Source: Octopus bimaculoides (taxonomy: Eukaryota). From it: a stretch of 59,695 nt of DNA. The DNA lies in the NCBI RefSeq assembly GCF_001194135.2, contig NC_068997.1, forward strand, positions 26,961,396 through 27,021,090, read 5' to 3'. The stretch's first letter is position 1. Each line of letters starts with the position of its first letter. The notes under the pieces were generated by a model. The model searched no databases. It saw only the letters and a program-made list of their open reading frames with translations, and was not told the origin of the DNA. The position numbers were made by a program, and so were the translations under genes. Positions 5,044 through 59,037 of this stretch are shown piece by piece.

Positions 5044-5481
5044 CACGGTGTCCCAAAAGTCTCTGATGGGTTTCAGTTTTCAATAACTTCCTTAACTTTA
5101 CAAATAAATGCATGAAATTTTGATACAATATAAAGGACATAATGGAAATTAATATGCACAAGTTAAATTTTGCAATACCACTACATCACATATGACAAAT
5201 GACATTGCCTAAATGGCAGCCATTTTCAGCTTTGCACATCCATGCTCTTTCCAAAACTTGCACCATAACGTCCTCAAGAGTTTCAGACACCACTTCTCTG
5301 ATTTCTCTGTTGATGTTCTCCTTCAGTTGCACCAGGGTCTCTGGTTTGTTGACGTAAACCCTCTCTTTCAGGTATCCCCACAAGAAAAATTCCAGACTAG
5401 TCAAGTCTGGGGAATGTGAAGGCTGTTCAAAGAAGACCTCACACATGGTTCCAGCAAGATGGGGCAACTGCTCATATCACA
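5044..5481 (-). mobile_element. Tc1/mariner-superfamily remnant (3' end plus TIR), with an internal inversion
   Basis: TA-CACGGTGTCCC terminus; SPDLTSLEFFLWGYLKERVYVNKP on - strand; WFQQDGATAHIT on + strand. Related to 34769-35240. Confidence 0.8.
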
Positions 5482-32950: not shown

Positions 32951-33585
32951 GTGTGCATCTATCACTCTATGTGCGCATACACGCACACAGACACACAAAA
33001 ACACACACATGCATTAATAGTATTTATAAGTCCATCTCACCGCTAAATAAGCAGATCTATGAATCTATATTTGTTGATTATTTAACTGTATGAAAAGAGC
33101 ATATATATATATATATATATATATATTTGCCACCTAAATGTGGCTAACCCTTAAGGGCCATGTTATATATNNNNNNNNNNNNNNNNNNNNNNNNNNNNNN
33201 NNNNNNNNNNNNNNNNNNNNNNNNNNNNNNNNNNNNNNNNNNNNNNNNNNNNNNNNNNNNNNNNNNNNNNNNNNNNNNNNNNNNNNNNNNNNNNNNNNNN
33301 NNNNNNNNNNNNNNNNNNNNNNNNNNNNNNNNNNNNNNNNNNNNNNNNNNNNNNNNNNNNNNNNNNNNNNNNNNNNNNNNNNNNNNNNNNNNNNNNNNNN
33401 NNNNNNNNNNNNNNNNNNNNNNNNNNNNNNNNNNNNNNNNNNNNNNNNNNNNNNNNNNNNNNNNNNNNNNNNNNNNNNNNNNNNNNNNNNNNNNNNNNNN
33501 NNNNNNNNNNNCGAATAAAAATAAATACAAAAAGAGGGGTTTTGTATGATTGTGTATAGAGGAATATATTATGTTAAACAAAATA

Positions 33586-33955: not shown

Positions 33956-34226
33956 ATGTACGATGATCTTCTCTCATTTTTCTGTCTACCAAAAACATTC
34001 TCCAGGCTTTAGTTGGCCCAGGAGTATTATAAGAAGACACCTGCCCTAGATGATGCACCGTGGAACTGAACCTGAAACTATGCAGTTGGGAAGCAAACTT
34101 CTTACCCACATACCCATGTCTGTACCTATAATTGTGTTAAAGTTTAATGACAAAATATTTAAAATCTATTGATTTCTTGGAGGTTTGTTGGTTAATCAAT
34201 TTGGTGTCTTTTTCTTTTCTGTAGAC

Positions 34227-35619
34227 ATGGAATCGGTCAAGAGTCAAGAGAAAAAACCAGCCAAGAAACGTGTGAAGGCTCTTTGTGTTAAAATAAAAGA
34301 ACAGGTAATACATGTGGAACCACTCCTAAATTACAAATTGCTACTGTGTAACTGAGTCAATGCATGCTTTAGGCTGCTATTATAGTTTAACCACAGGTCA
34401 GTCTAGATCCTGCAGAGGTATGGTCATAAATGACACCAGCCTGTTTTCTTATTCAAACACAGTGTATCTAGGACTACATTATATGATGTATCCTTCCTAC
34501 CTTTAGTTGATCATCCTCAGGGCAAACCAATTATGAAAGATGTTTCAACTGTGAGCATCCTGTCTTCTATTCAAACACAGTATATCTAGAACTACATTAT
34601 CTAGTTTATCCTTCCTTTCTTTATAACAATGTGGTATGATTTATAGAAATTTAGCTGCTATTTCCAACAGATTTAGTGATGTGTCTTGTTTATGGTTTAA
34701 CACCTAAGTAATCGTAATAACTAATTGTGTTTGATATGTTGATATATATGTGTGTGTGTGTGTGTATACAGGGTGACCCAAAGGTCACTGAGAGGTTTTA
34801 ATTTTTAATAACTCTCTTATTTTTACAAACAGGTGTATGAAATTTTAATTCGATATAGAGGAGATTAATCTGCATTAATCCTTTTTCATCATAACTCTGC
34901 ATTATATATGAAAAATATCTTTTAAGTGGCGTCCATTTCCAGCTCCACACATCTGTGCCCTTTCCAAAATATGTTCCATGATAGCTGTATGTGTTTCAGG
35001 GTCCATTTCCCTGATTCCTCTAGTGATATTCTCCTTCAATTACTCCAGGGTTTCTGGTTTGTTGACATAAACCTTCCCCTTTGGGTACTCCAACAAGAAG
35101 AAGTCAGGGCTGGTCAAGTCTGGGGAATGCGATGATAGCGAGAGATGATTCTTTCTCCAAAACATTGCCTCAGTAACCGCTCTCTCTTTGTGGTATGAGC
35201 AGTTGCCTCATCTTGCTGGAACCACATATCAGGCCTGTTTTAAATGGGGTCAGTAAAATAAGTACCAGTTGAACACTGGGGTCTATGTAATTGACTGACC
35301 TACCCCCCTGGATTTTCTGGCCTTGTGCCAAAATTTATGTACAGGAAGAGGGGTGAGAATAGTGTGACTTGTCTCTGATTTAACGCATCAGCATTCATAA
35401 TACTAATGAATTATTTTTGTTATTCTTTTAAACTTCAGATGGAGTTCTACTTCAGTAATTCGAATTTACACAAAGATCGTTTTTTCAAAAAACAAATTGA
35501 TAAAGACAAAGATGGATGTAAGTTGAATTTTGTTTTTTCCATTTGAATTTTTCTGCTTTTTCCTCTCTCTTTGTTTCATTTTCATTTTAAACGTTATAAG
35601 CCTTACAGAGGAGATGACA

Positions 35620-35665
<46 letters not shown>

Positions 35666-38600
35666 CCCTCTCTCTCTTGGTCAACCTTAGGCTGTAGTAG
35701 AAGGCACTTGCCCAAAGTGCCATACAGTGAGACCGAACCCAAGATCACATAGTTGGGAAGCAAGTTTCTCAACCATGCAGTTACACCTGCACCTATGCTC
35801 CAAACAGCAAATTAGCAACAGAAAAGTTGTCTTGCTAAACCATTTAAAATTTTTAATTATTTTCCAAATTAATTGAAACATATAGACAGTCTATATTTTG
35901 AGAAATACATTTATAAAAAGAGTTAATAATCATTTGTAAATTAGACTAATTAATACCTTTATGATTAGAATTTTCCAGTTTGACATCAATCTAAGGAATT
36001 AACTCATGCTTTTATTTTTTCCTTTCTTTTTCAGATATTGATTTGTCTTTATTTTTAACATTTAATCGTATCAAGTCTCTTACTGAAGACCTGGCTGTCA
36101 TGCGTAAAGCACTGTCAACTTCTTCTATGCTGCAGGTGAGACTTTTCGTCAGGTTTGTCACTTTATCCATTTTTACAATATATATTTGTATGTATACAGG
36201 GTGGACCAAAATTCGTCCACAAAATAAGTTCAATATGCTCACAACGGCACACATCAAAGTCATTGCACATGTTTGGGTCAGTAGCTACCTCCAGAAGTAG
36301 GTAGATTATAGTCCAGTCATTTCCAAGAGATGCTTTGTATAACGGCATCTGAGAATGCCGACCTGAAAACAGAACAGAAAAATTTTAATTTAAATCGTTT
36401 AAATAAATAAATTATGATGAATGTATGTGAAAATGAGTTGATAAAGGAAGTTCATTAGCTTACAGCTGTTTCTGCTGTAAGATGCAGTGAACTCATAATT
36501 GAGTGCCTAAGTAACACCTTATAGCTTCACACATGCACTCATGTATTCATCAACCTCATCCTTTTTTTCTATTCTCTCACTATTTGTCTCCAGTTAAGTG
36601 AAAACCAGAACAGCGTACGTCGTGTCACTCCATACACAGAGCCTAAAGATGTGGACGAGAGGACAGTTTATGTGGTGAGGCACAACATTCCCCTCTTATT
36701 CTTTCTTTTCATTTTTTTTTTACTTCTTTTCTTTTAGTTTTTTTCTTTAATCTCTTTTTTTTCTCTGCAATTGTCTTTTTGCTGCTATTTTTCAATAATC
36801 TAGGCTTCTCATATAATGTACCCTATCATTGTTTTCCCAAATGTACCCAATCATAAGGTTCCTAAATGTATCACAAGAGCACAAAGAAAGAGTGAACTCT
36901 GCAAGTCCAAAACCAACTCCTTTCCCTTCATTCGCAGCCGGACATGCCGTCACCCATCTTCTTCCATGTGATGTCCTCGATCATTGTTGACAACAACAGA
37001 CAAACAATTGAATGTATCCTGTAACCAGATACTTAAATTTGACTTTATGAGGTGTATTTTGTTGAGTGTGTGTGTCTGTGCTCATGTATGTGTGTGTCAA
37101 TTTGTTTACATTTGTGATCGTCTTAAAATCGCTGAACTACAAGCAGTGATAGTCATTTCCTTTGTCAATAAAGAGAACGCTTGCCCAAGGTGCCATATAT
37201 TGGGGGTTGAACCTGAAACCATCTGGTTGCAATGTGAGTTTCTTAATCGCACAGCTGTACCTCCACAAATGGTAAAAAGAAGAAGGAAATTGTTCTATCA
37301 ACTCTATTGTTTCCTTGTAAAATATAACAATACCTTAATTGTTAAATGTTGATTGCAATATTTTCAGGAACTGCTGCCAGCCAATGCTGACCATGATTGG
37401 CTGAAGAAAGTGTTTTCCTCCTGTGGGATGGTCACTTATGTTAGTCTTCCACGCTATAAGTCCACTGGAGATCTCAAACAGTTTGCATTTGTTGAATTTG
37501 AAACCATTAAAGGTGCACAAAGAGCTTGTAAAGTGAGTCTGTCTCTCTTTTATCTTCTTTCTTTGCTTCATTTTTTTCTTGTGTTCTTCATTGTTTTCTA
37601 AAAACCTTCCATCATTCTAAAGTCAGTGAAAAATAAGTACCAGTTAAATATTTGAGGATGGTTCAACTTTATTCAAATTTATTTACCTTGCGCAAAAACT
37701 AAGAAATCCTACTTCGATAAAGTAGTGGTTCTCAACCATTTTTTTGCCTATGGATCCCTTTGATTCCTGTTTTACTTGGGTCGACCCGCAGAGCCATTTG
37801 ATGTTTATAAAATCCTATTATGTCTTTATAATTAAAGATTAGTAAGAATTCTATTTAAAAAATTGTTAAAATATTTTGTGTGTTGTAGAAGTGCTACCAA
37901 TTTACTGCACATAAATTTTAATTACAATCTTATATGGATCCCAGTTGAGAACCACTGAAATAGCAGATTCCACGTGATCCATGCAAGTATAGAAAAGTGG
38001 ACATGAAAACGACAATGATGATGATACACAACATAATATATTTGGCACTGCTTTCTTTCAGGTGGTTAATCAGATATTCAGTTTGTTACATGTGTTTGTG
38101 TATATGTATCTGCATATATATGTGTGTGTAAGTGTGTTGTTTGTTTTGTTAATACAGAAAAATGGATATAAAATAGGAAATATGTAGTTGCTTTTGTTGT
38201 CAATTTGTTGCAGGAATTAAATCAACCACCCATTGAAACTACCAATAAACCTGGAAAATTCCCCAAGAATAACAAAGCTTTGAACCAGCTGAAGAAGAAA
38301 GTTCAGACAGAAGGTAAGTAGATAGTTTCGATTCGGCTCTATATATAGCATCAGTGGCATCGTCAGTATCATTTTCATCATTGTCATCATCATAATCACA
38401 ATCATTATTCTCATCATCATCATCAGTAGCAGCAACATTCTCCCTCTTCCTCCTCCTCAGTTTGACATTCCCTTTTCATCCTCGATTATATGCATCAGAC
38501 AGTATTCAATGAGACAGATTTTCAAATATCCCTCAAATCACAACATGATATCTTAAACATGAGAAAAGGAGGAAAGGCTCTTTGTTCGCTGTAGTTCTAG

Positions 38601-41600
38601 ATACACTTATTTTTCTGAAAACAAGATGGGTTGGTCTGGTTGGAATACTCTTAACCAAACATAGGCCTTCTCAAAATCGGCAGATCATCATCTGGAGCTA
38701 AATTAAATTACAAAAATTCAGTAGGTTGGTGTGTTGGGCAGTCATAAGCCACAATTAATATATTTCTTTTATTTGTTTCAGTTTTGGACTATACCATCCT
38801 GGGGTACTTCTTTCATTTCTTTCTCTTTATCTCTCTCTCTGTAAACCTCCATCTTTAGTACATGCTTCTTTCTACAACTCTCACTCTCTCTCACTCCCAC
38901 CCCCGCCGCCAACAAGCCAATCTCTATGTGTGCTCTCACCTTGCAAGAAATAACAGCCAAATCTTGAAATCATAGCCTGTTTTAAGAGAAGACGAACACT
39001 TTAGTTAATGTAGCCCTGAATATGTACACCATGTGTGTAATGTTTGAATAATAATAATTAAAAAAATAGGATGGTCACAGCTGAAGTGTCTTTGATCCTA
39101 AGATTCTCCTCCTGCTCTATCTGAGCTCACTTGGGGGTTAAACAGCAGCAACAACTCTACAGTCTCTGCAAAATGAAACTGTAGAACAGATTGCTAAGAC
39201 TGTTTGAGTTGGAGCAACATTGAAAAATGACTTATAATAATCCATGATGTGGAAGAGGAGAAGAAGGGATGATGATGATGAGAAGAAGTGGTGATGATGC
39301 TGGGTGATGAGTGGGTGCTATATATCAGGTATGCATGTGGTGGGAGCTACTCTACTGCACTTTATCATGTGTTCCTTTTCTTTGTTTTCTATAGATGGTA
39401 TGGATTTAAGTGAGGAGAAACCAGAATGTGATCTCATCAGCAATGACAGTCCGAAGAACAAAGGTTGCAAACAGAAACGAAAACGCAACAGTAGCTCCGA
39501 AGCAAAGGAACCAAGCCGACCAATTAAACAGCGGAAGTTGGAACCTTTGTGTGGAGAAAACACTGATGAAACAAACATCAAGTTCGAAGGTCAAGCAGAA
39601 GAAGGTGCCAAATCAGAAGACGAGGATCGAGGTTCTGGTAGTTGGAAGAAGAAGAAAAAGAAGAAACGACATTGGTTGGAGAGTTTCAGCAAACTTTCTA
39701 ATGATGTTTTTCCTGAGAAGTGTAAGCTCCAACGTCGGTCTAGCAGCAACTCAAAACTAAGTGATATCGAACCAGCTGATAGACTGGCTCAAAAATCAGA
39801 GACTGATTTAAAATCATCGAACAAACAGGAATCAGGTGAGACTGCGACACAGGAAAAGACTCCTCATGAAACTGAATCACGGTTGGAAAACTTATCTGCA
39901 GACGAAGGAATCGATTCTGCTGCTAAAGATACTAAAAGGTCTAAAAGGAAACGGAAAAAAGACAGCATGGATAGTACAACTGGTAGTGATCTGGAGAATG
40001 TGCCAAAGCGTATAAAATATGACAGAACTGAAGAAGCCCTGAACAACAATATGCAACTAGATCATTCTAAAGATTGTAATAAGAAACGGCGCAATAAGAA
40101 TCGTAAACGATCCAAACCACTGCCACACTTGCGGGTCATCTCCAAGTGAGTTGTAGTTCCTTGCTTTTATTTCTTTCTTTTTTGTATCATGTATTTTTTG
40201 TCTTAAATGAATGGCCAATGAGTTTCTAGTGGAAATTCTTCAGAAACTCACAGTTATCTAAGTATCTCAGTTCTTGACTGAGTAGACCTACATTCAAAGG
40301 GGTTTCATCCATAGCCAACCTGTTTTTTTATCCAAGTATTGTGTTCTCTGGATTACATTATCCAATGGGTGTTTTTGTCTTTTAAAGACAGTAAAGTGTA
40401 ACTTGAAGGTGATTTTTCTGCTATTCTTAGCAGGTCTAAAAATCATATAGAAACTCTCTTGTTGGCTCAGGCTGGCTGTATGTTGCCCTCATGGACTAAC
40501 TGTCAACATTAGTATCTGGTCACCACAACTAGTGCCTCTATAAAGAAAAAAAAATCAAGCTCTGACTGGACCATGACTCCTGTAACTAAATAGGTACCAT
40601 GTGGAAGTATGAGACATTTTGGCACAGCTGTTTTGGTGCTGCCTATTTGGCATGGCTGACTCCAGGCTTTTTAATGTTTCTCTCATTCTCCTTTCTATCA
40701 CTATCTGTCTGTATGTATATATTTCTAAGTGCGTGTGTGTTTGCCTCTAGTCCCAGAAACTAGTTTCCAAAACAGGTTCAATGTCCAGTCAGCTGTGCCA
40801 AATTGACAGTGTCCAAACAGCCTCACTCACTTGTCTCATTCCGACCATGTAGAAGTATGGCTTAAGTAAATTTCAGGATCATGACAGAACTAACAAATAG
40901 TTTTCATGACCATGCAGCATTGAGTTCTAATACTACCATAGTTATAGCTTGGAGGCTCCCTCTCTTGAAGTCATCAGGTATGATGAGTAATCAGGATGCT
41001 AATGGGTTAAGAGTTGCTACTCAGAGTTTCAGCAATGTACTTATGTCATGCACTTATTGGTAGTTGAGTTAAGGTAACTTTGTTAACTCAGTTGATGTTA
41101 TTGTTGTTCCATCTCAGGAAGGAATGGTTAAAGTACAAAAGTGAATACCTTGCCAGACAACGGTCCAATATGTCCAGGATGAAGCAGATGCTCATTGAGA
41201 TGAACAAGAATCAAGGTATGTTACAACCATTATGAAACACTATTTTATTCAGTCATATTATATATGTCTATATTATTCCTTTATACACAACACACGCACT
41301 CACTGGACTTCTGCCTTCTGTGTTATCCAATGTCCATTTTCTCAAAACATTGACATGAAAAGAGCATCCAGTTCATACTGTAAAGTGGTTGGCATTCAGA
41401 CAGGAATCCAATCATAATAACCAAACCACTAAACTGTCAACTGTCTAGTCTGCCTAGTTGTAAGTAGGCACCACAGTGTGATGTAGTTCACTGTATTGTG
41501 TCCATGACCAAGACACTGAAGACATTGAACTGTCAACAATCCAGTTTCTCTAGCTGTAGACTGGATTGTTAACTTAGTATTGTAAAACATGAATTAAAAT

Positions 41601-42126
41601 GATAATTATATCTTAGAAATATATCTTAAAACCAGACTACTGAATTTTAGCACTATTGAAGTTTTCTATATTTTTTCTATTTCTTTCTTTTCTTTTTATA
41701 TATATTTCCAGACTGTAAAATTCCTGAAAATTCTTCTGAAGACAAATACAAGTTTATTCCAAATGTGATTGTAAACATTAAGTCTGAGACAGTATTAAAC
41801 GTGAAGGAATTAAAAGTATGTTTTTGGCAATTGCCATGTTTATTTGGTGGTGATACTTGTTCTTGTTGCTGCTGTTGCTACAACAGCATAAGGTCCCTGA
41901 ATAAGGGTTGTTTAAGGTTGTTGAACAAAACACCCATGTTTCCAGGGGTGAATCACCCAAACTCCAAAACTTCCCCTCAACACATGGCTATGATGCTCCC
42001 CAACTACTTCTGCTTGTGATCAGAGATGCACATATCGTCAGCCACCAAGGGACATGCTCAACTGATTAAAGTAAAAAAACTGACAAGCAAATCTGTGGTA
42101 TTGAGCAGAATATTTGCTGTAGCCCA

Positions 42127-42164
<38 letters not shown>

Positions 42165-43844
42165 CAGACACTTAGCTCATGTCTGACAGTGGGTACATGT
42201 TATTGACAAAACCCAACAAGGAACAAATGTACATCTAGTTTCTCACCACTGCAGCTGGTCAATTCTGCTACTGATATATTTTTTATGTTCTTAAACATTA
42301 GAGATATTATCTCTACAAATACCACAGTTAATTTGCTTTTTCAGAATGTATCTGCAATATGTATGATACTCTGATGGCTATTTTAATCTAATACAGCTTC
42401 TTTACACAACAAATTTATAACTGTGTGTGTGTGTGTTGACTGTATGACAAAAGCAAATGTGTTTAAGGTGATGTAACCTACAGTAAAACTTGTTTTAACA
42501 GGGAAAACTCACACCACTTGGTGACATTGCATACATAGATCTGAAAGAAGTTGATACGCAGGCCTTTGTGCGTTGTAAAAATGAAGCAAGTGCACAGAAA
42601 ATATGCAACACCAAATTCGAGACATTAAGTGTTTCACTTCTTGAAGGTAAAGAAAAAAATAATTTATTTGTTGTGAATTCAAAATGGTTTTATTTGAAAT
42701 TCTTAAACTGGTTCCACTGTTGTTTAGCCCCAGGTCCGTCCTGGCCAAAGAGGACCATACCGTGACCATCCTATCTTTTTTTATCTTAATATTGTCTATC
42801 TAGGACTATTATACACATATATGTATATACAAACACACACTCACACTCATACATGCACATCCATATATAAATAATATACACACACACAGTGATCAAAGAC
42901 CACATCAGAATGTAAAAATAAAAAAGAATGGAAGAAAGCTTATCCTGCTGATTAAGCATGCCTTAAGGTCACTGACTCACAGACATGCTGCAGACTCTCT
43001 CTGTCTTTTCTACTTTCTCTGCTACAATAAACTCATCTTCTATCCATCTTTATTGTTCAGGTGAAGATGAGAAGTGCTACTGGGACAAACTCAAGGCAGA
43101 CAGAGAGAGTAAGATCAACTCGAAACATCGTTTGAAGAAAAGAGGAACACTCAAGGTTTGTTTAAAACTTAGGAGCAGTTTTTATTTTCACCTTTTTTAA
43201 AAAACTTATTTAGATTGAACCTTGATATTTCTACATTGAAGTAAATATATTCATTTTTAGAAGATGCAAAATAAAAATAATTGTGTTGCTATTTCTGTTA
43301 AAATAGAAATATCTAAATTTCAATAGATATGACAATATGTGCATCATAATATCCTCTTTTACCATGCTTGTAGAGGATGGATGAAGTTTATTGAGGGAAA
43401 TTTTCTGTGGTTAGATATCCTACCTCTTGCCAACCCTTATCTGTTCTTGAGCAGAATAGTTTCGATGGGTGTCACTGTCATACAAGCAGTGTCAATATTT
43501 CCAGTGGTGAGCTGATGGAATTGTTACCACGTCAAGCAAAATGCTTAGCAGTATTTCGTCTCTCCCCATGTTCTGAGTTCAAATCCTGCCAATGTCGACT
43601 TTGTCTTTCATCCTTTCAAGGTTGATAAAATAAATACCATTTGAGCACTGGGGTCATTGAATCGTCTTTCCCTTGATCTTGCTGTCCTTGTGCCAAAATT
43701 GGGAACAATATTACCTTGTTTGGAAATAGGTTTGGAAACAGGAAGAGCATCCAGCCATCGAAAAAAATCTGCCTTAATAATCTCCATCTGATCTATGTAA
43801 GCTTGGGAAAGTGGACATTAAAGCAGTGAGGATGAGGATGTTGA

Positions 43845-45876: not shown

Positions 45877-46799
45877 TTAAAAACAGAATTATTAAGAGGT
45901 AGTGAGTAGTAGCAGCAGCAGCAGCATAAGATAGCAATATAAGAAAGCAAGTGACTTTTCAAATATTTTTTCTTTATTGATGATTGAAGAAATACATGTA
46001 AGTGTGGCTTCCTCATTCCTGGTCTCTGGTGACAGGCTTCAGTGATAGATAAGAAATAGAAGGAAGAACAGTCGAGAGTTCTTAAGACAATCACAGTTGG
46101 AATCCAAAGTCACTGTAGTGGAAATATTTAGCTTTATGGAGATGGGGTGGGGGTAGGGTGAGAAGAAAAAATAAATAACAGACTCACCCCCGTTACTATA
46201 GAAACAGACAAAATCCAACAGGTTTACAACAAAAATAAAGAAAAAAAGTATTTGGTGAAAAAATACCCACTCAGCCCAGATGACTAACCGTTTAAATACA
46301 TTTGATCAATATGAACAAAGATAATCTTCCAGTTTTTGTTTGTCATTGTCCACTAGTTAGCAGTAGCATTACTAGGGGGAGGGGTCATAGCCTAAAAATA
46401 AATGCTGCTACTCCATGTTGTAAGTTAGACTGTGCAAAGTTAGCAAGAGACCAAAAGGCACAGGAAAAAAAAAAAAAANNNNNNNNNNAAAAAAAAAAAA
46501 AAAAAAAAAGGAAACTAACAAAATATACAAACTAATTACTACAACGACACCAGCATACCATTTATCTGAGCAGCTGAAAGAAACTATTTTCAATGGCAGA
46601 TAGAGGTCGAGATGACCAAGTGATGAAGACTTCTCAGAATGTAACACCTCCCAAGTCAATCACTTGTGATTTTCTGCATCATCCGAAAGAGGTGGGGGTA
46701 AAAAAATAAAAGGGCACACCTACTCCCACATCACAAACAGCTGCCAGTAATTAAATACATTGTTGATAGTTATGTCTTGTACATCAGTGCTCACTGATA

Positions 46800-48050: not shown

Positions 48051-51000
48051 TTCCACCTATTCTCAGAAATGAGTTGCATCTTGGGAAGATCAGAAATTAC
48101 CTAGTGTTAACTAAATCGTATTTTAAAATGTATCATCAGATTATTGTTGTCTTTTTTTTTTGTTGTTTCTTTTATATTCAGATGCATGTAAAGATTTATA
48201 AATTTCCTTATTAGTATTTTTTTTCTGTTTGCGTAGATGTAAATATTAAAACGTTTTCCATCTCTAAAAGACGAGGTTAATAGTTTGAAAAATTATAGTC
48301 ATAAAATATATGTATATATATATTTTGCATAGGACGTGCATTACAGTGTGTTAATAATCAACGTGATAGATAAGAGAAGCGTAGTGTTCTAATGATACCA
48401 GAGCAAGACCCAAAATGTTAAATGCTCATTAGTGTTAGTTCGTTTAGAACCTATCCTTCTGAATGACTGATATTGAAACAATATATTTTTCAAAAAATCT
48501 TTCACAAATGCCTACTAATGAGTCATAATTGATGTAAGGGATGAAAAAAAAAAACTCTTAAAAAATTCATTTTCAATAATGACTAATGGTTGACTAGAAA
48601 TGACACCATGATTGAAATGTTTGATGAATAAAATTTATATTTAATCCAAAAGATGTTATTTTCAATTAAAAACAAAACGGGAATTTTTTTTTGTTTGTTG
48701 TTTGCTAAATATCAAGTGTATGAATTAAGTTGGTGTAATACTAAGGTGATTAATTAACTAGGTGATTATAAAACATTAGCTATTATTGCAAGTTTTAGCA
48801 TTGACGTTTAGGACACATGAAAATTTCCTTGTTGTAGACATTCCAAAGAGATTTATAAAAAAAAAAAAAAAACGACAAAAAACAAAAACACCACGAAGTC
48901 TAAATGCTGAGAAGATAACTTCAGGTGTCTTTAATAAGTGATTGTCTTACCACTGGGAGAGAAGTGGGGAGAAAGAATATATAAATTAATAATAAATGTA
49001 GCCCAAGAAAATGATCTGTAAACCACAAGCTGGTGTCATCAGATAAGTGCTTGATTATAAATGGGCACAATTGTTGTTGAATAGTCCTGCTCTCAGCCAT
49101 GATGCATTAAGGAGGTTAAAACATGTCCCTAGTTCATTCTTGCTTTCCTTTTTTAATGCTTTCAGTTCTCATTATATATATATATAGAACCAACTTCTTT
49201 AAATTTGTATATCAGGAATTGTGAAAAGTAAGAGAAACAAAATAAAATATACATTGGCATAATTGTCATTTCAATTGAAGATAACAGAAGCCTAAATATG
49301 GTGCAGCAGTTAAAAAAAAAAGTTTGAACCACAAATGGCCACTATGAAGCATCGTAAACATTGTTACCATAGCAATATTCTGTGTGGTCCCAGTCAATAG
49401 AAGAGATCTCCAGAAGTTGGTACCAACAGCAGGTAATAGATTACACGAGTAGTTCCAAAGACTTCTCATTCCAAACCCAGTCAGCTCCATCTTTTGGAAT
49501 AATTCTATTTCATCATCCCAAATGAATGCAAAANNNNNNNNNNNNNNNNNNNNNNNNNNNNNNNNNNNNNNNNNNNNNNNNNNNNNNNNNNNNNNNNNNN
49601 NNNNNNNNNNNNNNNNNNNNNNNNNNNNNNNNNNNNNNNNNNNNNNNNNNNNNNNNNNNNNNNNNNNNNNNNNNNNNNNNNNNNNNNNNNNNNNNNNNNN
49701 NNNNNNNNNNNNNNNNNNNNNNNNNNNNNNNNNNNNNNNNNNNNNNNNNNNNNNNNNNNNNNNNNNNNNNNNNNNNNNNNNNNNNNNNNNNNNNNNNNNN
49801 NNNNNNNNNNNNNNNNNNNNNNNNNNNNNNNNNNNNNNNNNNNNNNNNNNNNNNNNNNNNNNNNNNNNNNNNNNNNNNNNNNNNNNNNNNNNNNNNNNNN
49901 NNNNNNNNNNNNNNNAAAAAAAAAAAAAAAAAAAATGTCGGCAAATTTCATCTTATTTTGTTTCTTTTTTTTGTTTGTTTCCCCACTTCTAAATATATCT
50001 TTTATAAGTTCTATTAATAAAAGCTGAACAAGTGTGTAAAAGTGTAAACTTATAGTTAAAAAAAAATCTCTTCCATCTTTCAGTTAAAATTTTATAGTGT
50101 TCATTAAGTACTAATTGATTAATTAATTTTAAAAAATTAAAATCTTGCTTATTATTATTATTATTATAATAAGAGTTCACAGACAGGCAGTCTAAATGAA
50201 TTGAGTTGTATAAAGTATCTCTGAGCATCATACATAGCAGTACACAACAGATAATTATAATAATAAAAATAATAATATTGGTTTTCCTCCCCGGGCAGTG
50301 TGTAGCTTAAAGAGAATTGTCTTGAGAGAAAGAGAGAGAGAAAAAAAAGGGTATATTTTCTTTTCTTTCTTTTTTTTTTATAATCAGCACAGCAATGGCA
50401 CCAACACCATTCCATATTTCAATATTCAACTCCTCCAGCTGTAGGTAGGAATGATAGGCAAGACATTCGGAAAGATCTACTGCAAAGTTACATGGATAAA
50501 TACAATTAGCAGATTGATAGCATATACAGGTGAGGTAACATAAAAAAAATTTTTCAATAAGAAATATGTCAAGTTTAAAAAATACAATAGTCTTAGAGGA
50601 ATTGAGTTCAGGAACTTTCAGAAGTATTAAAACAACATAGCCCTCAAGTAAATAATAATAATAATATCTTAATAAATGATAATTGTCATTAAGTTATGAT
50701 AATAATGAATGTAAAATGCCCTATTGTCTAAAATGAAATATCACCAATGTCCTTAACACAAGTAAAGCCTTAATCATGAATACATTTAATTAATTTCAAG
50801 TACCTTATTGTATATGTTTGTTTGTTTGTGTGTGTGTGTACGCACACACACACACACATATATATACATTATAGAATGTGACATGCAGAACTATCTCACT
50901 GTGCATGTTTGCATGTGTGTATGTATGTATGAGTGTTTGTGCATGTGTGAGTGAAAGCACATATATTAGTTTTATATTCGGGAAGAAGGTCCTTTATCCA

Positions 51001-51394: not shown

Positions 51395-54300
51395 TCATTT
51401 GTTGCTTTCCTCACTATCAGCTGTTCCCTCTGAAGTAGCCTCAGTGCTGTCCTTCACACCGTTCCACTGCTCAGCTTGCAAGGCATTATTTGGAGACACA
51501 GTTGTCTCTTTCTCTGTCGCTGCCTCTGATTCTGAAAGAGAAGATAACAGCAATACAAGTTGAAAGTAAATTTCATTGGTCGACTCCCTAATGAAAAACG
51601 CTAACTCAGGAGAGAAAACTAGTAGCTTTCTTTTTTTTTCTTCTTTTTTTTTAAGGTTGGGAAGAGGGAGGGAGGAGGTGGCAGGGGAGGGAAACGGGTT
51701 AAACAACTATGTTGTTAGTTATATTATTATTATTATTATATATATATACATATATATATAATGTTAATAGAAAAAAAATCTGAGTGAAGATATATCAATT
51801 TGCCTAATAGTAGTAATGTTAAACTATAATAATGATAATAATAATAAATATTAATAGTGGGCTATGTACAGTTAACATTCAGAGAGTTCCTGTCCTCAAC
51901 ACCTTACAACAAAAACTGTTTTGTTTTTTGTGGTTTTGTTTGTTTGTTTGTTTGTTAGTTGGTCGTTTTTTTTTTTGTTGTTTCCAAAATAAAAAAAAAA
52001 GAAAAGAAAAAAAAGTAATCAGGTTTTTTCAAAATAATCCCCCTCACAATCTATACAAGTTTTCATTCTTTTAAACCAATTTGAAAAACACTGAGTCCAT
52101 TCAAAATTGGACAGTTGAGACATTTGGTTGACCAGTGCCTGGACAGCTTCTTCGGGGCTCTCAAATCGGATGCCCCTCAGCTTTTCTTTCACTTTGGAGA
52201 ACAAAAAATAATCACAAGGTGACAGATCAGGGCTAGAGTCAGGGTGAGAGATTATCTGTACGTGGTTTTCAGCTAGCAAGTCGAGTGTTGCTGCAGCAGT
52301 ATTGATACGAGTGTCATCATGGTGGAGGAGAATGCCCCGGAGACCAGAGTCTGGGCGCTTCAATTTGATTGCTTCAAACAACTGGGGTAAACACTTGGTC
52401 ACGTACCACTGTGCACTGACTATTTCCCTGTCTGTCAAAGACGTGGTCACTAGATAACCACTTCTTTGGAAATAAGTTGCCATCATTGTTTTCCCAACAC
52501 TTCGAGGCCTTTTCAGTTTTAAAGGAGGGTCTTCATCTGGAAAGACCCAAACAGAAGCCTGCCGTTTTGTTTCAGGTTCATATTGATAAAGCCAAATCTG
52601 GTCTTCTACAACAATATCCCAGACCTTAGGAGAACCTCCATTTTCAAATTTTTTCAGCATATAATGACACCATTCCACTCGAGCCTGCTTTTGCATTTCA
52701 TTAAGAGTTTGTGGAATCCAACAGCAACTATGCTGTTTTAAATGCATATGATTCTGTAGAATCCATTTGACATTTCCTGATCCAATGCTTAAGGTACCTT
52801 CTATTTCTTTAGGTGTCACTCTTTTATCACTATTCAACATTGCCTCTATAACTTCAATATTTTCAGCGAGTATTGAAGCGTTTGGGCGGCTAGTTCTTTG
52901 GTCATCTTCCAAATCTTCTTTACCACGTCTAAATTCTCCAAACCAGAATTTAACTGTACTGTAAGAGGGACTTAAATCCTGAAATAATCGATACAAAATT
53001 TCATGACTGTCAGCTGCACTTTTCCCTTTCGAGTAATGCAGGAACATCATGGCTCGAAAATTTCTTCTCTGCAGTTTCATGGTGAATACTGAAAGATTAG
53101 TCTGCTGCTTAACTTTGTCAAGCTCTGAAATGAGAATGAAGAATGAGAGAAGGCTGAAAGCTCAGCTTGTCTTATAGACAATAACGACAATTTAGGAACA
53201 GTAAAGATTTGACAAGGTGTTGAATTGAGGAACTGTCTGATGGTGATTTCTTGAAGCATTCTTCCTTTTCTTTTTTTTTTATTTTCTGGGGGGAAGGGGG
53301 AATTATAGAAGAGAGATAGAGAGAGAGAGAAAGAGAGAGAGACAGAGAGAAAGAAAGAAAGAAAGAGAAAAAACAAAATACAAAGAAATCAATATAAAGT
53401 GAAGTACTTTGTCATTGTTATCTGAAAGCAGCCAAAACAAAAGAACAAAAACAAAAAAGTGCATGACATGACAAATGTACAAGAAACCAAAACCAAAAAC
53501 ATCAGCTCCTTAAAACTAACAAAACATTATAGAAATAATGACTTCAATAGGATGACTTTTATTTATTGTTTTGCTTGGCTGAAGAAGAAAGGGCAGTACC
53601 CATAATCTTCACAGACTCTTACAGACTGGAGAGATAAATACTGTTGATGATCAGTAGGAACTCGTATAAGTGGATATTTGTTTAAAAACATCTGGAGAGA
53701 AAATACTGGGTTCACTACAGTGTTTGTAAGTGAGAGGTAGAGACAGTGATAGCAGGGAAGGAGGAGCAGAAGAGAGGTAGAGAGGTGGTGCACTAGTGGT
53801 ACACAGCCTGCTAATTTAGAGTAGGAGAGAGAGAGAGAGAGAGAGTAAGTGTATGTGAATGTGTGCCCTAGTGATCATGCAGTGTTGAACCTAGTTGTAT
53901 AAAAACAATATAGTATGTATTGGTTAAGAACTGATGATGAAATAGTTTTTAGTTCAAGGAAGGAAGTTAGTTGAGTAAACAGTAACTTGCAATGTTAATT
54001 AAAATGGGAAAAACTTGAGTTACATCTGGAGACAAGGTATTTCATCAAAAATTAAAACGACAAAAACACAAACTGTTTTATTTTGAAACAATTAGATATT
54101 TTCAATTGCATGATTTCTGTAACAAGAGAGAGAGTGAGAGAGAGAGAGAGAATCAACCATTTGGTTGTGTCAAAGTTCAACCATGGTTGAACAACAACAA
54201 AATAATAAGTAGTAGGTCTGATTATTATACTACCTTAAATGGAGAGCCACACTTAGCACTGACAAACATTTTGCCCACAGTCAAATCATCTCAAATCTAA

Positions 54301-55177
54301 CCTCCTTGTATCAGACATATAAGGTAAGGCGATCATGCATTTAGAGAGAAAATACAGTTTAAATGGATAGGGTGTCTTTTTAAAAATCAGAATGGAACAC
54401 AGAATGAATGAGAAAAAAGAGGCCCCTCTTCCCCAGCACGGTCTGTGCATGTGTGACTACCAACCTACCTGTAGTGGCTGGATTGAGAGAAAGAAAGAGA
54501 AAGAGAGACTCTCAATAGTTTGGGTGTGTAACTAACAACCTACCTGAAGTGGCTGGATTATCAGGTTTGGTTTCTGAAGCTTCAGAAGCAGCAGAAACAG
54601 GAGGAGCAGTAGGGGTGTCTGTAGTGGTGGTGGTGGTAGTGGTGATGGTGGCGGCGGCAGTGGTGGTAGTAGTGATGGCGGTGGTAGCAGTGGTGGCAGT
54701 GGTTGGGGTAGTGGTGATGGCAGCAGCAGCAGCAGTAGTAGTAGTGGTAGTAGTAGTAGTAGTAGTAGTATCAACAGTAGTAGAAGTGGTTGTAGTAGCA
54801 ATGGGGGAAGCTGAAAGGGCAGGAGCTGGCGATGATGAAGGAGGGGGTGGAGTAGGTGTCTTCTCACTGGTGGCTGTTGTCTCCTCACTGTCCCCACTGA
54901 CAGTGNNNNNNNNNNNNNNNNNNNNNNNNNNNNNNNNNNNNNNNNNNNNNNNNNNNNNNNNNNNNNNNNNNNNNNNNNNNNNNNNNNNNNNNNNNNNNNN
55001 NNNNNNNNNNNNNNNNNNNNNNNNNNNNNNNNNNNNNNNNNNNNNNNNNNNNNNNNNNNNNNNNNNNNNNNNNNNNNNNNNNNNNNNNNNNNNNNNNNNN
55101 NNNNNNNNNNNNNNNNNNNNNNNNNNNNNNNNNNNNNNNNNNNNNNNNNNNNNNNNNNNNNNNNNNNNNNNNNNNNN

Positions 55178-58200: not shown

Positions 58201-59037
58201 TTCAACACTGCAGCAGGTGCTGCTGGTGTTACTGGCGTTTCTAATTCTTCTTCCTCTTTATTCACTTCAGATGGTTCGGGTTTATCACTTGATGTAGAAT
58301 CCTATAGAGATAAAGTCAGCAAAATAAAATGTCTGACTGACAATGGTAGTGAAGAAACAATACTGTTGGCTATTAGCAGTTAATACAACAACACTGTACT
58401 ATCAATTTATAACTAAGACTAGCAAAGTTGATCAACATATTTGCTACCATCACTTATTAGGATGGCAACACAAATAAAGAGGTTACAAATTCAAAATTGA
58501 TAAATCTGAAATGTTTTACACTGGAATGGAAAAAGGATTAAATTGAAACAAAATTAAACTTTATCTCACTTTCAATTTAAAAATAAGTTTTATTCATCTG
58601 AAATTAAGAAATTGGGAATGTAGAGGTTTCCCCTTTATCAAGAAATTAACAGCAACAAGATTTCTATAAGTTCTAATTACCACATTGCTCTTTGATTCTT
58701 CAATTTCCATTTTCTCAACTGTGTCACATTTTTCTTCGTCTTTAGGTTTTGTGGAAATCTCACTCTCCTGCATGTCCAAATCTGGTGGGCCAGGCGTTGC
58801 TGCTGATGAACTTCCAGGAGTGGCAGGTGACATACTGGAAGCAACTGGGGGTGTTGGCGTTGACGGAGGTTGCTGTGGTGATGATGACAATGGTAACTGC
58901 TGATGTAAAGCAGCAGCAGTCTTTGCCTGTTGCTGTTGTTGCAGAAACTGTGCATGCCGTTGACGAAGCTCTTCCTTGACTTTTGCAAGCATATTAGCAA
59001 ATACTTCATCTGTGATCTGTGGTTTGCTTTCACACAG
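51395..59037 (-). CDS. SMARCE1: Probable SMARCE1/BAF57 (SWI/SNF HMG-box subunit), 3' exons of the native isoform; 5' part lies beyond the window end
   Basis: Exons: 58681-59037, 58128-58301, 57544-57645, 54544->54905 (acceptor hidden in the N-gap), and terminal 51395-51531. The first visible exon starts in phase 0 with LCESKPQITDEVFANMLAKVKEELRQR. This resembles the post-coiled-coil segment of SMARCE1 as recalled (human ELKR|LCGLKVEVD with an intron at the same position; Drosophila BAP111 HCKPAVDEETFQKM), followed by an acidic, disordered tail. The exon structure is well supported; gene identity rests on this short segment only. Confidence 0.68.
52019..53080 (-). CDS. Mariner (D,D34D) transposase-derived ORF, 353 aa, uninterrupted; candidate alternative terminal exon of the SMARCE1-like gene (exon from 53124 or 53088)
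   Basis: Two HTH regions (RAMMFLHYSKG...SYSTVKFWFGEFRRG; DKRVTPKEIEGTLSIG), WIPQTL (WVPHEL-like), triad D160, D255, D290 with 34-residue spacing, SPDLSPCDYFLF, and a C-terminal WFKRMKTCIDCEGDYFEK. No TIRs are recognisable. Confidence 0.95.
   Translation of the reverse strand: MKLQRRNFRAMMFLHYSKGKSAADSHEILYRLFQDLSPSYSTVKFWFGEFRRGKEDLEDDQRTSRPNASILAENIEVIEAMLNSDKRVTPKEIEGTLSIGSGNVKWILQNHMHLKQHSCCWIPQTLNEMQKQARVEWCHYMLKKFENGGSPKVWDIVVEDQIWLYQYEPETKRQASVWVFPDEDPPLKLKRPRSVGKTMMATYFQRSGYLVTTSLTDREIVSAQWYVTKCLPQLFEAIKLKRPDSGLRGILLHHDDTRINTAAATLDLLAENHVQIISHPDSSPDLSPCDYFLFSKVKEKLRGIRFESPEEAVQALVNQMSQLSNFEWTQCFSNWFKRMKTCIDCEGDYFEKT
54469..54477 (-). CDS. Candidate 9-nt frame-preserving microexon of the SMARCE1-like gene
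   Basis: CT-rich tract, then ...AATCCAG|CCACTACAG|GTAGGT. Phase 1 to phase 1, adding Ala-Thr-Thr. Confidence 0.4.
55798..56090 (-). mobile_element. Family C RTE-tail element
   Basis: Matches 14452-14740 and 33763-33955. Confidence 0.65.

What the first reader, a model, noticed from the sequence alone, without database searches (positions are those of the whole stretch)
51395..54544. Predicted SMARCE1/BAF57-mariner transposase fusion made by alternative terminal-exon choice
Seen in sequence: the Thr-rich host exon ends at a phase-1 donor (...CCAGCCACTTCAG|GTAGGT, 54544). The native last exon (acceptor 51531) is phase 1 and adds 45 aa. Between them, on the same strand, lies an intact 353-aa mariner transposase ORF. 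It is preceded by a strong polypyrimidine tract and acceptor (TCTCTCATTCTTCATTCTCATTTCAG|, exon start 53124). Splicing there reads G|AG CTT GAC AAA... = ELDKVKQQTNLSVFT-MKLQRR..., in frame with no stop. A second acceptor (53088) is also in frame. No AATAAA/ATTAAA lies between the transposase stop and the native last exon, so the native exon would become 3' UTR of the fusion mRNA. Established knowledge: this layout parallels host-transposase fusions such as SETMAR (SET plus Hsmar1) and CSB-PGBD3 (intronic transposase used as an alternative 3' exon); SMARCE1 is a BAF/SWI-SNF subunit. Inference: an isoform keeping the HMG and coiled-coil regions but swapping its 45-aa tail for about 368 aa of transposase could tether BAF remodelers to mariner TIR-derived sites. 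I know of no description of such a fusion.
Basis: partly seen in the sequence, partly recalled or inferred. Interest (0 to 1): 0.93.

Follow-up and report, generated by a model that had tools for sequence, protein, structure and literature searches.

The report
Octopus SMARCE1–mariner transposase fusion gene
In octopuses, a single-copy mariner transposase kept intact inside the last intron of the chromatin-remodelling gene SMARCE1 (BAF57) is spliced onto that gene in about 10-25% of transcripts, making a conserved host-transposase fusion that appears not to have been described.

Summary
The window is Octopus bimaculoides chromosome CM046617.1. The host is SMARCE1/BAF57.

RNA reads and contigs from nine runs in five studies bear on the fusion. 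In five runs (four studies) they join the Thr-rich host exon (end 54544) directly to the acceptor at 53124, inside a mariner element. In two more (a fifth study) coverage starts exactly at that acceptor. Single 1647-nt RNA contigs link host exon, the whole 353-aa transposase ORF, the rest of the intron and the native last exon. The native exon therefore serves as 3' UTR, as predicted. The fusion is roughly 10-25% of 3'-end isoforms.

The element is single copy in three DNA runs. It sits at the orthologous site in a second Octopus species and in Argonauta hians, whose GenBank model (GAB1609329.1) is the same fusion.

The ORF has dN/dS 0.06 at dS 0.70, no indels and an intact DD34D triad. Both 27-nt terminal inverted repeats (TIRs) are 100% identical between the genera.

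It is a new member of the SETMAR/KRABINER/CSB-PGBD3 kind. The fusion protein and its function, BAF tethering or otherwise, are untested. The second acceptor (53088) has no read support.

The parts
58681..59037 (-). SMARCE1 exon encoding the end of the coiled-coil region (LCESKPQITDEVFANMLAKVKEELRQRHAQFLQQQQQ...) followed by low-complexity sequence
   Evidence: tblastn with A. hians SMARCE1 fusion protein residues 320-452. The same region of the A. hians protein aligns to human SMARCE1 residues 260-303.
54544..54905 (-). 3' part of the Thr/Ala/Pro-rich penultimate host exon. It ends in phase 1 at 54544, with donor GT at 54543-54542. Its 5' part is lost in the assembly gap 54906-55177.
   Evidence: Sequence and translation. 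RNA unitig boundary at 54544. Its last bases are the loose ends of both the native and the fusion junction reads.
53241..54543 (-). Upstream part of the last intron. It is removed in both isoforms and poorly conserved (55-67% identity in aligned columns to Argonauta).
   Evidence: RNA depth is 0-3 here against 10-25 over the ORF. Identity profile.
51879..53240 (-). Complete single-copy mariner element (1362 bp), in the same orientation as the host gene
   Evidence: TIR pair (pair I7). A single DNA unitig spans it and both flanks at single-copy depth in three DNA runs.
53214..53240 (-). 5' terminal inverted repeat TCAGACAGTTCCTCAATTCAACACCTT
   Evidence: Identical at 27/27 positions in Argonauta hians and in the second Octopus species.
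53125..53155 (-). Polypyrimidine tract and 3' splice site (…CCTTCTCTCATTCTTCATTCTCATTTCAG|) inside the element's 5' UTR
   Evidence: Junction reads and contigs end here and continue into the host exon sequence. The tract is identical in Argonauta.
53081..53124 (-). First 44 nt of the alternative terminal exon. With the G of the host exon they encode ELDKVKQQTNLSVFT in frame before the transposase Met.
   Evidence: Translation. 41/44 nt are identical in Argonauta and the frame stays open there (ELYKVRQQTNLSVFS).
52019..53080 (-). Mariner transposase ORF, 353 aa, with catalytic residues D160/D255/D290 (DD34D). Stop codon at 52019-52021.
   Evidence: dN/dS is 0.062 against Argonauta with no indels. 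RNA depth is well above the upstream intron.
51906..52018 (-). The element's own 3' UTR, pyrimidine- then A-rich, including an A11 tract near 51965-51975 where coverage in run X9 ends
   Evidence: 73% identity to Argonauta.
51879..51905 (-). 3' terminal inverted repeat (AAGGTGTTGAGGACAGGAACTCTCTGA on the minus strand)
   Evidence: Identical at 27/27 positions in Argonauta and the second Octopus species.
51532..51878 (-). Remaining part of the intron. It is retained as 3' UTR in the fusion mRNA. The last ~70 nt before the native acceptor are nearly identical in Argonauta.
   Evidence: The 1623/1647-nt RNA unitigs run 53129->51507 without a break. Alignment.
51395..51531 (-). Native last coding exon of SMARCE1 (45-aa acidic tail, stop at 51395-51397). 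It is coding in the major isoform and 3' UTR in the fusion isoform.
   Evidence: 39, 72 and 65 junction reads from 54544 in X21, X22 and X23. Native-junction unitigs. The orthologous exon lies at L005 46006-46116.

Best explanation
A mariner (DD34D) transposon inserted, in sense orientation, into the last intron of SMARCE1/BAF57. This happened in an ancestor of Octopus and Argonauta, and the element has since been domesticated.

A 3' splice site inside the element's 5' UTR, 44 nt upstream of the transposase ATG, competes with the native terminal-exon acceptor for the phase-1 donor of the Thr-rich penultimate exon.

- Native choice, the majority: SMARCE1 ends in a 45-aa acidic tail.
- Mariner choice, roughly 10-25% of transcripts: the reading frame runs through 15 linker codons into the full 353-aa transposase and stops there.

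In the fusion form the mRNA continues unspliced through the rest of the intron and the native last exon to the native poly(A) site. The stop codon therefore lies in the terminal exon, and the mRNA should escape nonsense-mediated decay.

The product would be SMARCE1 (HMG box, BAF-anchoring coiled coil, long low-complexity linker) carrying a C-terminal transposase. That transposase has two HTH DNA-binding domains and a remodelled but DDD-intact catalytic domain.

Shown here:
- the junction;
- the read-through structure of the mRNA;
- single-copy status;
- orthology;
- strong purifying selection on both transposase domains;
- absolute conservation of both TIRs.

Inferred:
- the fusion protein is made;
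- it enters BAF complexes;
- the transposase moiety gives BAF57 a sequence-specific DNA-binding or dimerising module.

The invariant TIRs flanking its own exon are the most obvious candidate binding sites. One possibility is feedback on isoform choice or on local chromatin.
For: **Fusion junction**
- Loose ends at 53129 read GTGGCTGGATTATCAGGTTTGGTT. This is the host exon end, and 5 nt are shared by both sides.
- The junction is seen in X23 (3 reads), X9 (contig depth 342), X5 and X8 (1647-nt unitigs).
- X7 and X16 carry the 1623-nt unitig 53129->51507. X5, X7 and X16 show zero coverage at 53135-53250.

**Isoform share**
- Fusion against native-junction unitig depth: 35/210 (X5), 176/760 (X16), 35/123 (X7), 22/63 (X8).
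- Native junction reads number 39, 72 and 65 in X21-X23.

**Single copy**
- One DNA unitig, 51826-53338, sits at flank depth in X25 and X29. In X31 two unitigs (51826-52000 and 51971-53303) meet at the A-rich tract, also at flank depth.
- No protein above 52% identity exists outside the 90% cluster.

**Orthology**
- The A. hians locus has the same order: Thr-rich exon, mariner, native last exon, then a convergent LARP7-like gene.
- The GenBank model GAB1609329.1 is the fusion.

**Selection**
- dN/dS is 0.062 at dS 0.70, with no indels. It is 0.054 for the HTH part and 0.063 for the catalytic part.
- The host SMARCE1 exons give dS about 1.0 between the same species.
- TIRs are 27/27 and 27/27 identical, and the TIR-to-acceptor stretch is 94% identical. 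The upstream intron is 55-67% identical.

**Transposase features**
- DD34D is intact.

**Host identity**
-.
Against: - No protein-level evidence exists.
- Short reads do not show that fusion transcripts carry the HMG and coiled-coil exons. Linkage of the Thr-rich exon to upstream SMARCE1 exons in O. bimaculoides rests on the A. hians model and synteny. The GenBank O. bimaculoides model ends earlier, at about 57505.
- In X21-X23, direct junction reads are few: 3 in X23 and fewer than 3 in the other two.
- In X9, coverage ends at the A11 tract just after the stop. This may be internal oligo-dT priming or a second 3' end, so isoform shares are rough.
- The three substitutions in the 15 linker codons are all nonsynonymous, so the linker peptide itself shows no amino-acid constraint.
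- Residues next to all three catalytic Asps, and the WVPHEL and YSPDL motifs, are changed in octopods. Catalysis may be lost.
- No other TIR-like copies were seen in the genome (a weak test).
- RNA from Argonauta could not be examined.
Confidence: 0.8

Rival explanations
1. The transposase is a stand-alone domesticated gene nested in the SMARCE1 intron, as annotated in GenBank (a separate 353-aa gene). It would be translated from its own ATG on its own transcript. The spliced fusion RNAs would be a by-product.
For: The GenBank annotation of GCA_001194135.2 calls it as a separate 353-aa gene. The ORF keeps its own ATG. The 15 upstream codons show no amino-acid constraint. A few reads in X21 and X22 run upstream of the acceptor to about 53190-53250.
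Against: In X5, X7, X9 and X16, coverage begins exactly at the acceptor, with zero depth at 53135-53250. In X5, X8 and X9 the same unitig continues into the host exon. No pile-up of read starts suggests a transcription start site. The acceptor and the phase-1 compatibility are conserved in Argonauta. On the fusion mRNA the internal ATG lies far downstream of the SMARCE1 start codon.
Confidence: 0.1
2. The fusion transcript is made, but its role is regulatory rather than protein-coding. Use of the mariner acceptor would divert a share of SMARCE1 pre-mRNA away from the canonical isoform, and the ORF product would be irrelevant or unstable.
For: It is a minor isoform. Intronic sequence around both acceptors is highly conserved, as is typical of regulated alternative exons.
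Against: A purely regulatory exon would not keep 353 codons open with dN/dS 0.06 and no indel at dS 0.70, in both the DNA-binding and the catalytic parts. The stop codon lies in the terminal exon, so this is not an NMD switch.
Confidence: 0.07
3. This is ordinary exonisation noise from a recently inserted, still autonomous mariner that happens to lie in an intron.
For: The ORF, the DD34D triad and both TIRs are intact, as in an active element.
Against: The element is single copy in three DNA runs. It has no close paralogues. It lies at the orthologous site, with the same flanks, in a second Octopus species and in Argonauta, where dS is 0.70. Octopod-specific changes at otherwise conserved mariner motifs are fixed in all three sequences. 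No TA target-site duplication is visible.
Confidence: 0.02

Closest known systems
KRABINER (ZNF112-Mlmar1 mariner fusion of vespertilionid bats; Cosby et al., bioRxiv 10.1101/2020.05.07.082677)
   Same: A mariner lies in the last intron of a host gene. It is captured through alternative splicing onto upstream host exons, using an acceptor inside the transposon. The full transposase (HTH plus DD34D) is retained, and the fusion coexists with the parental transcript.
   Different: The host here is a core SWI/SNF subunit (HMG box, coiled coil), not a KRAB zinc-finger gene. The lineage is a mollusc. No frame-restoring deletion is evident. Both TIRs are kept invariant. No abundant cognate transposon family was detected in the genome.
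SETMAR / Metnase (SET domain plus Hsmar1 transposase, anthropoid primates)
   Same: A chromatin-related host protein is fused to a complete mariner transposase that is single copy at the locus and under purifying selection. The transposase aligns to SETMAR's catalytic and DNA-binding domains in the PDB.
   Different: From my own knowledge, not tested here: SETMAR arose from an insertion downstream of the SET gene with creation of a new intron; it has DDN instead of DDD; and it has thousands of Hsmar1/MADE1 TIR sites to bind. Here the triad is DDD, the element is intronic and used as an alternative terminal exon, and no other TIR copies were seen.
CSB-PGBD3 (ERCC6 plus piggyBac transposase, primates)
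   Same: An intronic transposase is used as an alternative 3' terminal exon of a SWI/SNF-family chromatin-remodelling gene. The fusion and the native protein are made from one gene.
   Different: The transposon superfamily differs (piggyBac rather than mariner). From my own knowledge, the host there is the remodelling ATPase itself and loses its ATPase in the fusion. Here the host is the accessory subunit BAF57, which loses only a 45-aa tail.

Membership tests
mariner (Tc1/mariner superfamily, DD34D) transposase | N-terminal paired helix-turn-helix DNA-binding region | tested here: met
   Pfam HTH_48 at E 9.6e-10, 38.9 bits against a cut-off of 24.1. Aligns to Mos1 from residue 9 and to the SETMAR DNA-binding domain 7s03.
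mariner (Tc1/mariner superfamily, DD34D) transposase | Full-length homology to a characterised mariner transposase | tested here: met
   Mos1 (3hos), query residues 9-351 against chain residues 12-345, E 3.5e-32. Pfam Transposase_1 alone is just below its cut-off, at 22.5 against 24 bits.
mariner (Tc1/mariner superfamily, DD34D) transposase | Catalytic D,D(34)D triad | tested here: met
   D160, D255 and D290 align with Mos1 D156, D249 and D284, with 34 residues between the second and third Asp. Neighbouring conserved residues are altered: TGDETW to VEDQIW, and HDNASAH to HDDTRIN.
mariner (Tc1/mariner superfamily, DD34D) transposase | Short terminal inverted repeats bounding a ~1.3-kb element | tested here: met
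   27-nt arms at 53240-53214 and 51905-51879, 22/27 complementary, in a 1362-bp element.
mariner (Tc1/mariner superfamily, DD34D) transposase | TA target-site duplication | tested here: not met
   The flanking dinucleotides are CA and AT in O. bimaculoides and the same in A. hians. The duplication may have decayed, or the ends may be offset by a base or two.
mariner (Tc1/mariner superfamily, DD34D) transposase | Mobility or multiple copies (an active transposon family) | tested here: not met
   Single copy by DNA unitig structure and depth in three runs. No paralogue above 52% identity. Fixed at the orthologous site in three taxa. So it is a domesticated derivative, not an active family.
host-transposase fusion gene (SETMAR / KRABINER / CSB-PGBD3 kind) | Transposon inside or next to a host gene, in the same orientation, with the transposase on its own exon | tested here: met
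host-transposase fusion gene (SETMAR / KRABINER / CSB-PGBD3 kind) | Spliced transcripts joining host exons in frame to the transposase exon | tested here: met
   Junction 54544->53124 in X23, X9, X5 and X8. The frame is open.
host-transposase fusion gene (SETMAR / KRABINER / CSB-PGBD3 kind) | Purifying selection on the captured transposase, and conservation of the fusion architecture across species | tested here: met
   dN/dS 0.06. The same acceptor, phase and exon order occur in A. hians, and the ORF and acceptor are identical or near-identical in a second Octopus species.
host-transposase fusion gene (SETMAR / KRABINER / CSB-PGBD3 kind) | Fusion protein is made and functions (DNA binding, host-domain activity) | not testable with these tools
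   Needs proteomics, immunoprecipitation and ChIP or CUT&RUN.
SMARCE1 / BAF57 | HMG box followed by a conserved coiled-coil region homologous to human SMARCE1 | tested here: met
   The N-terminal 359 aa of the A. hians orthologue match human SMARCE1 (6lth_Q) at E 6e-89 over two stretches. More than 700 SMARCE1-named homologues were found. The O. bimaculoides upstream gene call carries HMG_box. The window exon matches residues 320-452. The HMG exons themselves lie outside the window.
SMARCE1 / BAF57 | Incorporation into BAF/PBAF complexes | not testable with these tools
   Needs co-immunoprecipitation or mass spectrometry.

The most novel reading that the evidence does not exclude
The fusion keeps a catalytically competent DD34D nuclease together with its two perfectly conserved cognate TIRs, which flank its own exon. 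BAF57-transposase would then be a BAF-borne, site-specific DNA-binding or DNA-cleaving module acting first of all on its own locus. It could work as a self-regulating switch of SMARCE1 isoform choice or of local chromatin state, or even as programmed nicking or excision. It might also act on diverged sites elsewhere in the genome. That would be an octopod-specific way of targeting a chromatin remodeller.
Probability: 0.12. Interest if true: 0.92.

Novelty: new member of a known kind. Interest (0 to 1): 0.78.

Why it matters
Host-transposase fusions are a recognised route to new regulatory proteins, but the catalogued cases are almost all from tetrapods and mostly involve KRAB, SCAN or SET hosts.

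This case would be a deeply conserved example in a mollusc. dS is 0.70 between Octopus and Argonauta. It involves a core subunit of the BAF/SWI-SNF remodeller.

It keeps the whole transposase, the catalytic triad and both TIRs under constraint. That makes it a clean system for asking what a captured transposase contributes beyond DNA binding.

Cephalopod genomes are noted for large-scale reorganisation and distinctive gene regulation. A lineage-specific way of directing BAF would bear on that question.

In practice, the O. bimaculoides annotation should be corrected. It currently shows a separate 353-aa gene and a truncated SMARCE1 model.

Tried and rejected
- **Long stretches.** Read laying on 4.4 kb was swamped by low-complexity repeats, and the top joints were all artefacts. 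I switched to short unique stretches and read the loose ends instead.
- **TIR copies.** Read laying on a 63-nt TIR stretch in DNA runs laid nothing, not even the known unitig. This is a technical failure and says nothing about TIR copies. The only evidence on TIR copies is the flat single-copy depth in bin 53175-53229, which is weak.
- **Other cephalopods.** The protein database appears to hold almost no other cephalopod proteins. The SMARCE1 search returned no cephalopod apart from one O. bimaculoides fragment. The lack of squid or cuttlefish orthologues of the transposase is therefore uninformative.
- **Related mariners.** I fetched two mariners at about 50% identity (L006, L007) to ask whether the acceptor or the TIR is ancestral. 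L006's TIR and both elements' 5' UTRs are unrelated to the octopod element, and no TIR was found in L007, so there is no answer.
- **Acceptor 53088.** No loose ends were found there.
- **Literature.** No paper on a SMARCE1/BAF57-transposase fusion turned up. Hits pairing 'BAF57' with 'transposase' looked like unrelated cancer and chromatin-biology papers.
- **Source species of L002.** A search for SRR11869391 found nothing, so the species is unknown.
Full report
**1. The observation**

- The Thr-rich host exon ends ...CCAGCCACTTCAG|GTAGGT at 54544, in phase 1.
- The native last exon starts at 51531 and adds a 45-aa acidic tail (ESEAATEKE…EESNK, counting the split Glu codon), with its stop at 51395-51397.
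- An intact 353-aa ORF lies between them at 52019-53080.
- The ORF has the Mos1-type HTH_48 domain. It aligns over its whole length (residues 9-351) with the crystallised Mos1 mariner transposase at E 3.5e-32, and with the SETMAR domains.
- The acceptor TCTCTCATTCTTCATTCTCATTTCAG|AGCTTG puts the exon start at 53124. Splicing from 54544 reads …DNPATS-ELDKVKQQTNLSVFT-MKLQRR… without a stop.
- No AATAAA or ATTAAA occurs between the transposase stop and the native last exon.

I add one feature. The ORF sits in a complete 1362-bp mariner element bounded by 27-nt terminal inverted repeats (TIRs) at 53240-53214 and 51905-51879. These are the only two matches to that motif in the window, against 0.01 expected. 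The acceptor therefore lies inside the element's 5' UTR.

**2. Where the window comes from and what the host is**

- The ORF's exact protein is encoded once in the assembly collection searched, in Octopus bimaculoides GCA_001194135.2, chromosome CM046617.1. It is annotated there as a separate 353-aa gene.
- Its upstream neighbour is a gene call with an HMG box. Its downstream neighbour is a convergent La/RRM (LARP7-like) gene.
- The window holds only the 3' part of the host gene.
- Its exon at 58681-59037 matches residues 320-452 of the Argonauta hians protein P0040.
- The N-terminal 359 residues of P0040 match human SMARCE1 from BAF cryo-EM entries at E 6e-89, covering the HMG box and the coiled coil.
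- The same N-terminal region retrieves more than 700 proteins, most of the best-listed ones named SMARCE1.

The host is SMARCE1/BAF57.

**3. Is the fusion transcribed?**

Yes. Long stretches were unusable because of low-complexity repeats. I therefore laid reads on short unique stretches and read the loose ends.

At the mariner acceptor, reads and contigs stop at 53129 and continue GTGGCTGGATTATCAGGTTTGGTT…. This is the plus-strand sequence of the end of the host exon. The five bases CTGAA are common to both sides, so the junction is 54544|53124.

- The junction is present as 3 reads in raw-read run X23 and as a contig of depth 342 in X9.
- It is also present as a single 1647-nt unitig in X5 and in X8.
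- That unitig contains 24 nt of host exon, the acceptor, the whole transposase ORF, the 3' TIR, the rest of the intron and the first 25 nt of the native last exon.
- X7 and X16 have the same 1623-nt unitig, 53129->51507.
- In X5, X7 and X16 there is no coverage at all at 53135-53250. Transposase-containing RNA therefore begins at the splice site, not at a promoter in the element, and it is not pre-mRNA.

The runs come from five different studies. The stop codon lies in the terminal exon, so the mRNA should not be an NMD target (inference from established knowledge of NMD).

**4. How much of it is there?**

| Run | Fusion/read-through unitig depth | Native-junction unitig depth | Fusion share |
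|---|---|---|---|
| X5 | 35.3 | 210.2 | 14% |
| X16 | 176.4 | 760 | 19% |
| X7 | 34.7 | 123 | 22% |
| X8 | 22.4 | 62.9 | 26% |

- In the raw-read runs X21-X23, native junction reads number 39, 72 and 65.
- Fusion junction reads in the same runs number 3 in X23 and fewer than 3 in X21 and X22.
- ORF depth in those runs is about 9-23% of native-exon depth.
- In X9, fusion depth is 342 against about 1780 for native. Coverage there stops at the A11 tract just after the stop codon. This may be internal oligo-dT priming or a second 3' end.

The fusion is a reproducible minor isoform, roughly 10-25%.

**5. Transposon or gene?**

In DNA runs X25 and X29 one unbranched unitig (51826-53338) crosses the whole element and both flanks. 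In X31 two unitigs (51826-52000 and 51971-53303) meet at the A-rich tract after the stop codon. In all three the depth matches the neighbouring single-copy unitigs: 9.8, 46.7 and 11.9. No other copy shares 31-mers with it.

A search of 5.8 billion protein clusters found nothing between 52% and 100% identity outside the ORF's own 90% cluster. That cluster has three members.

- The first member is the window's own protein.
- The second member is a 353-aa protein from Logan contigs of another Octopus species.
  - It is 98% identical at the amino-acid level.
  - The contigs are colinear with the window's intron from 53793 to 51827.
- The third member is GAB1609329.1, a 1243-aa 'hypothetical protein' of Argonauta hians.
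  - It consists of SMARCE1 (HMG box, coiled coil, Thr-rich region) continuing …LYKVRQQTNLSVFS-MKLQRR… to the end of the transposase.

The A. hians locus (L005) has the same layout.

- The Thr-rich exon ends …CCACCCACCACAG|GTAGG in phase 1.
- The mariner carries the identical acceptor TCTCATTTCAG|AGCTT.
- The native last exon lies about 470 nt after the transposase stop.
- The same LARP7-like neighbour follows.

**6. Selection**

- Between O. bimaculoides and A. hians the ORF has no indel, 91% amino-acid identity, dS 0.70, dN 0.044 and dN/dS 0.062.
- dN/dS is 0.054 for the HTH region and 0.063 for the linker plus catalytic region.
- Conserved SMARCE1 exons of the same pair give dS of about 1.0.

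Non-coding parts of the element are even more conserved than synonymous sites.

- Both TIRs are identical at 27/27 positions.
- The TIR-to-acceptor stretch is 94% identical.
- The 44 nt before the ATG are 93% identical.
- The upstream intron is only 55-67% identical in alignable columns.

Even at a generous 80% neutral identity, 54/54 identical TIR positions has probability of about 6e-6. About 70 nt upstream of the native acceptor are also nearly invariant. That is typical of regulated alternative exons (established knowledge).

The DD34D triad is intact: D160, D255 and D290, with 34 residues between the last two. However, 24 of the 103 positions that are at least 90% conserved in 23 related mariners are changed and fixed in the octopod sequences. 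These changes cluster at known functional motifs:

- TGDETW has become VEDQIW.
- HHDNASAH has become HHDDTRIN.
- PPYSPDLAP has become (D/G)(S/F)SPDLSP.
- RWVPHxL has become CWIPQTL.

This is the signature of a domesticated transposase with a remodelled active site. Whether it still cuts DNA cannot be told from sequence.

**7. Mechanism**

The best-supported account runs as follows. A mariner landed in sense orientation in the last intron of SMARCE1, before Octopus and Argonauta diverged. A splice acceptor in its 5' UTR, in phase with the host donor, created an alternative terminal exon. Selection has since kept the ORF, the acceptor, the frame and the TIRs.

- Shown: the junction, the mRNA structure, single-copy status, orthology and constraint.
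- Inferred: the SMARCE1-transposase protein is made; it enters BAF through the unchanged HMG and coiled-coil part; and it adds a sequence-specific DNA-binding or dimerising module, possibly a nuclease, at the end of a long flexible linker.

The DNA data show no extra depth over the 5' TIR region, so there is no sign of a MADE1-like family of sites. The only perfect candidate sites known are the two invariant TIRs around the exon itself. That suggests self-regulation as a hypothesis. The TIRs might equally be conserved as splicing elements.

**8. Rivals**

- A stand-alone nested gene is disfavoured, because coverage starts at the acceptor and continues into the host exon.
- A purely regulatory, non-coding isoform is disfavoured by dN/dS of 0.06.
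- An active young transposon is excluded by copy number and orthology.

**9. Comparison with known systems and novelty**

The closest system is KRABINER: a mariner in the last intron of ZNF112, captured through an acceptor within the transposon. SETMAR and CSB-PGBD3 follow.

The defining features of a host-transposase fusion that can be tested here are met; see the membership table. Features of an active mariner family (multiple copies, TA target-site duplication) are not met.

Five full-text literature searches found no description of a SMARCE1/BAF57-transposase fusion or of this octopod gene. The tetrapod survey does not mention SMARC or HMG hosts. The fused model does exist in GenBank for A. 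hians, but only as an uncharacterised 'hypothetical protein'.

I rate it a new member of a known kind, with unusually complete computational support.

**10. Caveats**

- There are no protein data.
- No long reads link the junction to the 5' exons.
- The O. bimaculoides GenBank SMARCE1 model ends at about 57505, so linkage of the Thr-rich exon to the HMG exons rests on the A. hians model and synteny.
- An assembly gap (54906-55177) interrupts the Thr-rich exon.
- Argonauta RNA could not be examined.
- The age of the insertion beyond the Octopus-Argonauta ancestor is unknown, because the protein database lacks other cephalopods.

Noticed in passing
L005 44191-44205 (A. hians); window ~53421-53434 (-): The A. 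hians gene model inserts a 15-nt microexon (…TTTCAG|ATAAGAATGACAAAA|GTAA, encoding DKNDK) between the Thr-rich exon and the transposase exon. It keeps the frame. The homologous O. bimaculoides sequence (TTTCAG|ATAACAATGACAAA|GTAC) is 14 nt and would shift the frame into a stop. O. bimaculoides junction reads skip it.
   Followed up: partly
window 54460-54484 (-) compared with 54535-54559 (-): A near-duplicate of the host exon end plus donor (AATCCAGCCACTACAG|GTAGGTTGG) lies about 76 nt into the intron, downstream of the real donor (AATCCAGCCACTTCAG|GTAGGTTGT). Using it would read through an in-frame stop. No evidence of use was looked for.
   Followed up: no
window ~34000-43200 (+): A LARP7-like gene (La, RRM_1, RRM_3; for example the RRM exon at 37353-37598 and a large basic exon at 39298-40146) is convergent with SMARCE1. 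The same neighbour lies downstream of the A. hians locus, so the synteny is conserved.
   Followed up: partly
window 52019-53080 (-), protein positions 120-124, 158-161, 255-260, 281-295: Octopod-specific fixed substitutions sit immediately beside all three catalytic Asps and in the WVPHEL-like and YSPDL-like motifs. The Asps themselves are kept. This is a remodelled rather than a decayed active site.
   Followed up: partly
window 51965-51975 (-): In run X9, RNA coverage of the fusion exon falls about 20-fold at a genomic A11 tract just after the transposase stop. In X5, X7, X8 and X16 it continues to the native last exon. This is either internal oligo-dT priming or an alternative 3' end.
   Followed up: partly
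window 5189-5476 (-); 25396-26302 (-); 26618-26902 (-) and 36166-36384 (-): Other repeat debris: a fragment of a different Tc1/mariner-type transposase (…HSPDLTSLEFFLWGYLKERVY…), LINE reverse-transcriptase fragments, and two copies of an ankyrin-repeat-like ORF (…TPLHKASLGGDWTIIYLLLEAGADPNMCNDFDETPLH…).
   Followed up: no
window 13749-14242, 24581-24729, 33171-33511, 46479-46488, 49534-49915, 54906-55177: There are six runs of N (assembly gaps). The last one lies inside the Thr-rich SMARCE1 exon, so the exon's full length and its acceptor cannot be read from this window.
   Followed up: no
L001 1-5576 (window equivalent down to ~57505): The GenBank annotation of O. bimaculoides ends its SMARCE1 model (552 aa) near window 57505 and calls the transposase as a separate gene. 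RNA shows at least two further host exons (ending at 54544 and starting at 51531), so the public gene model is truncated.
   Followed up: partly
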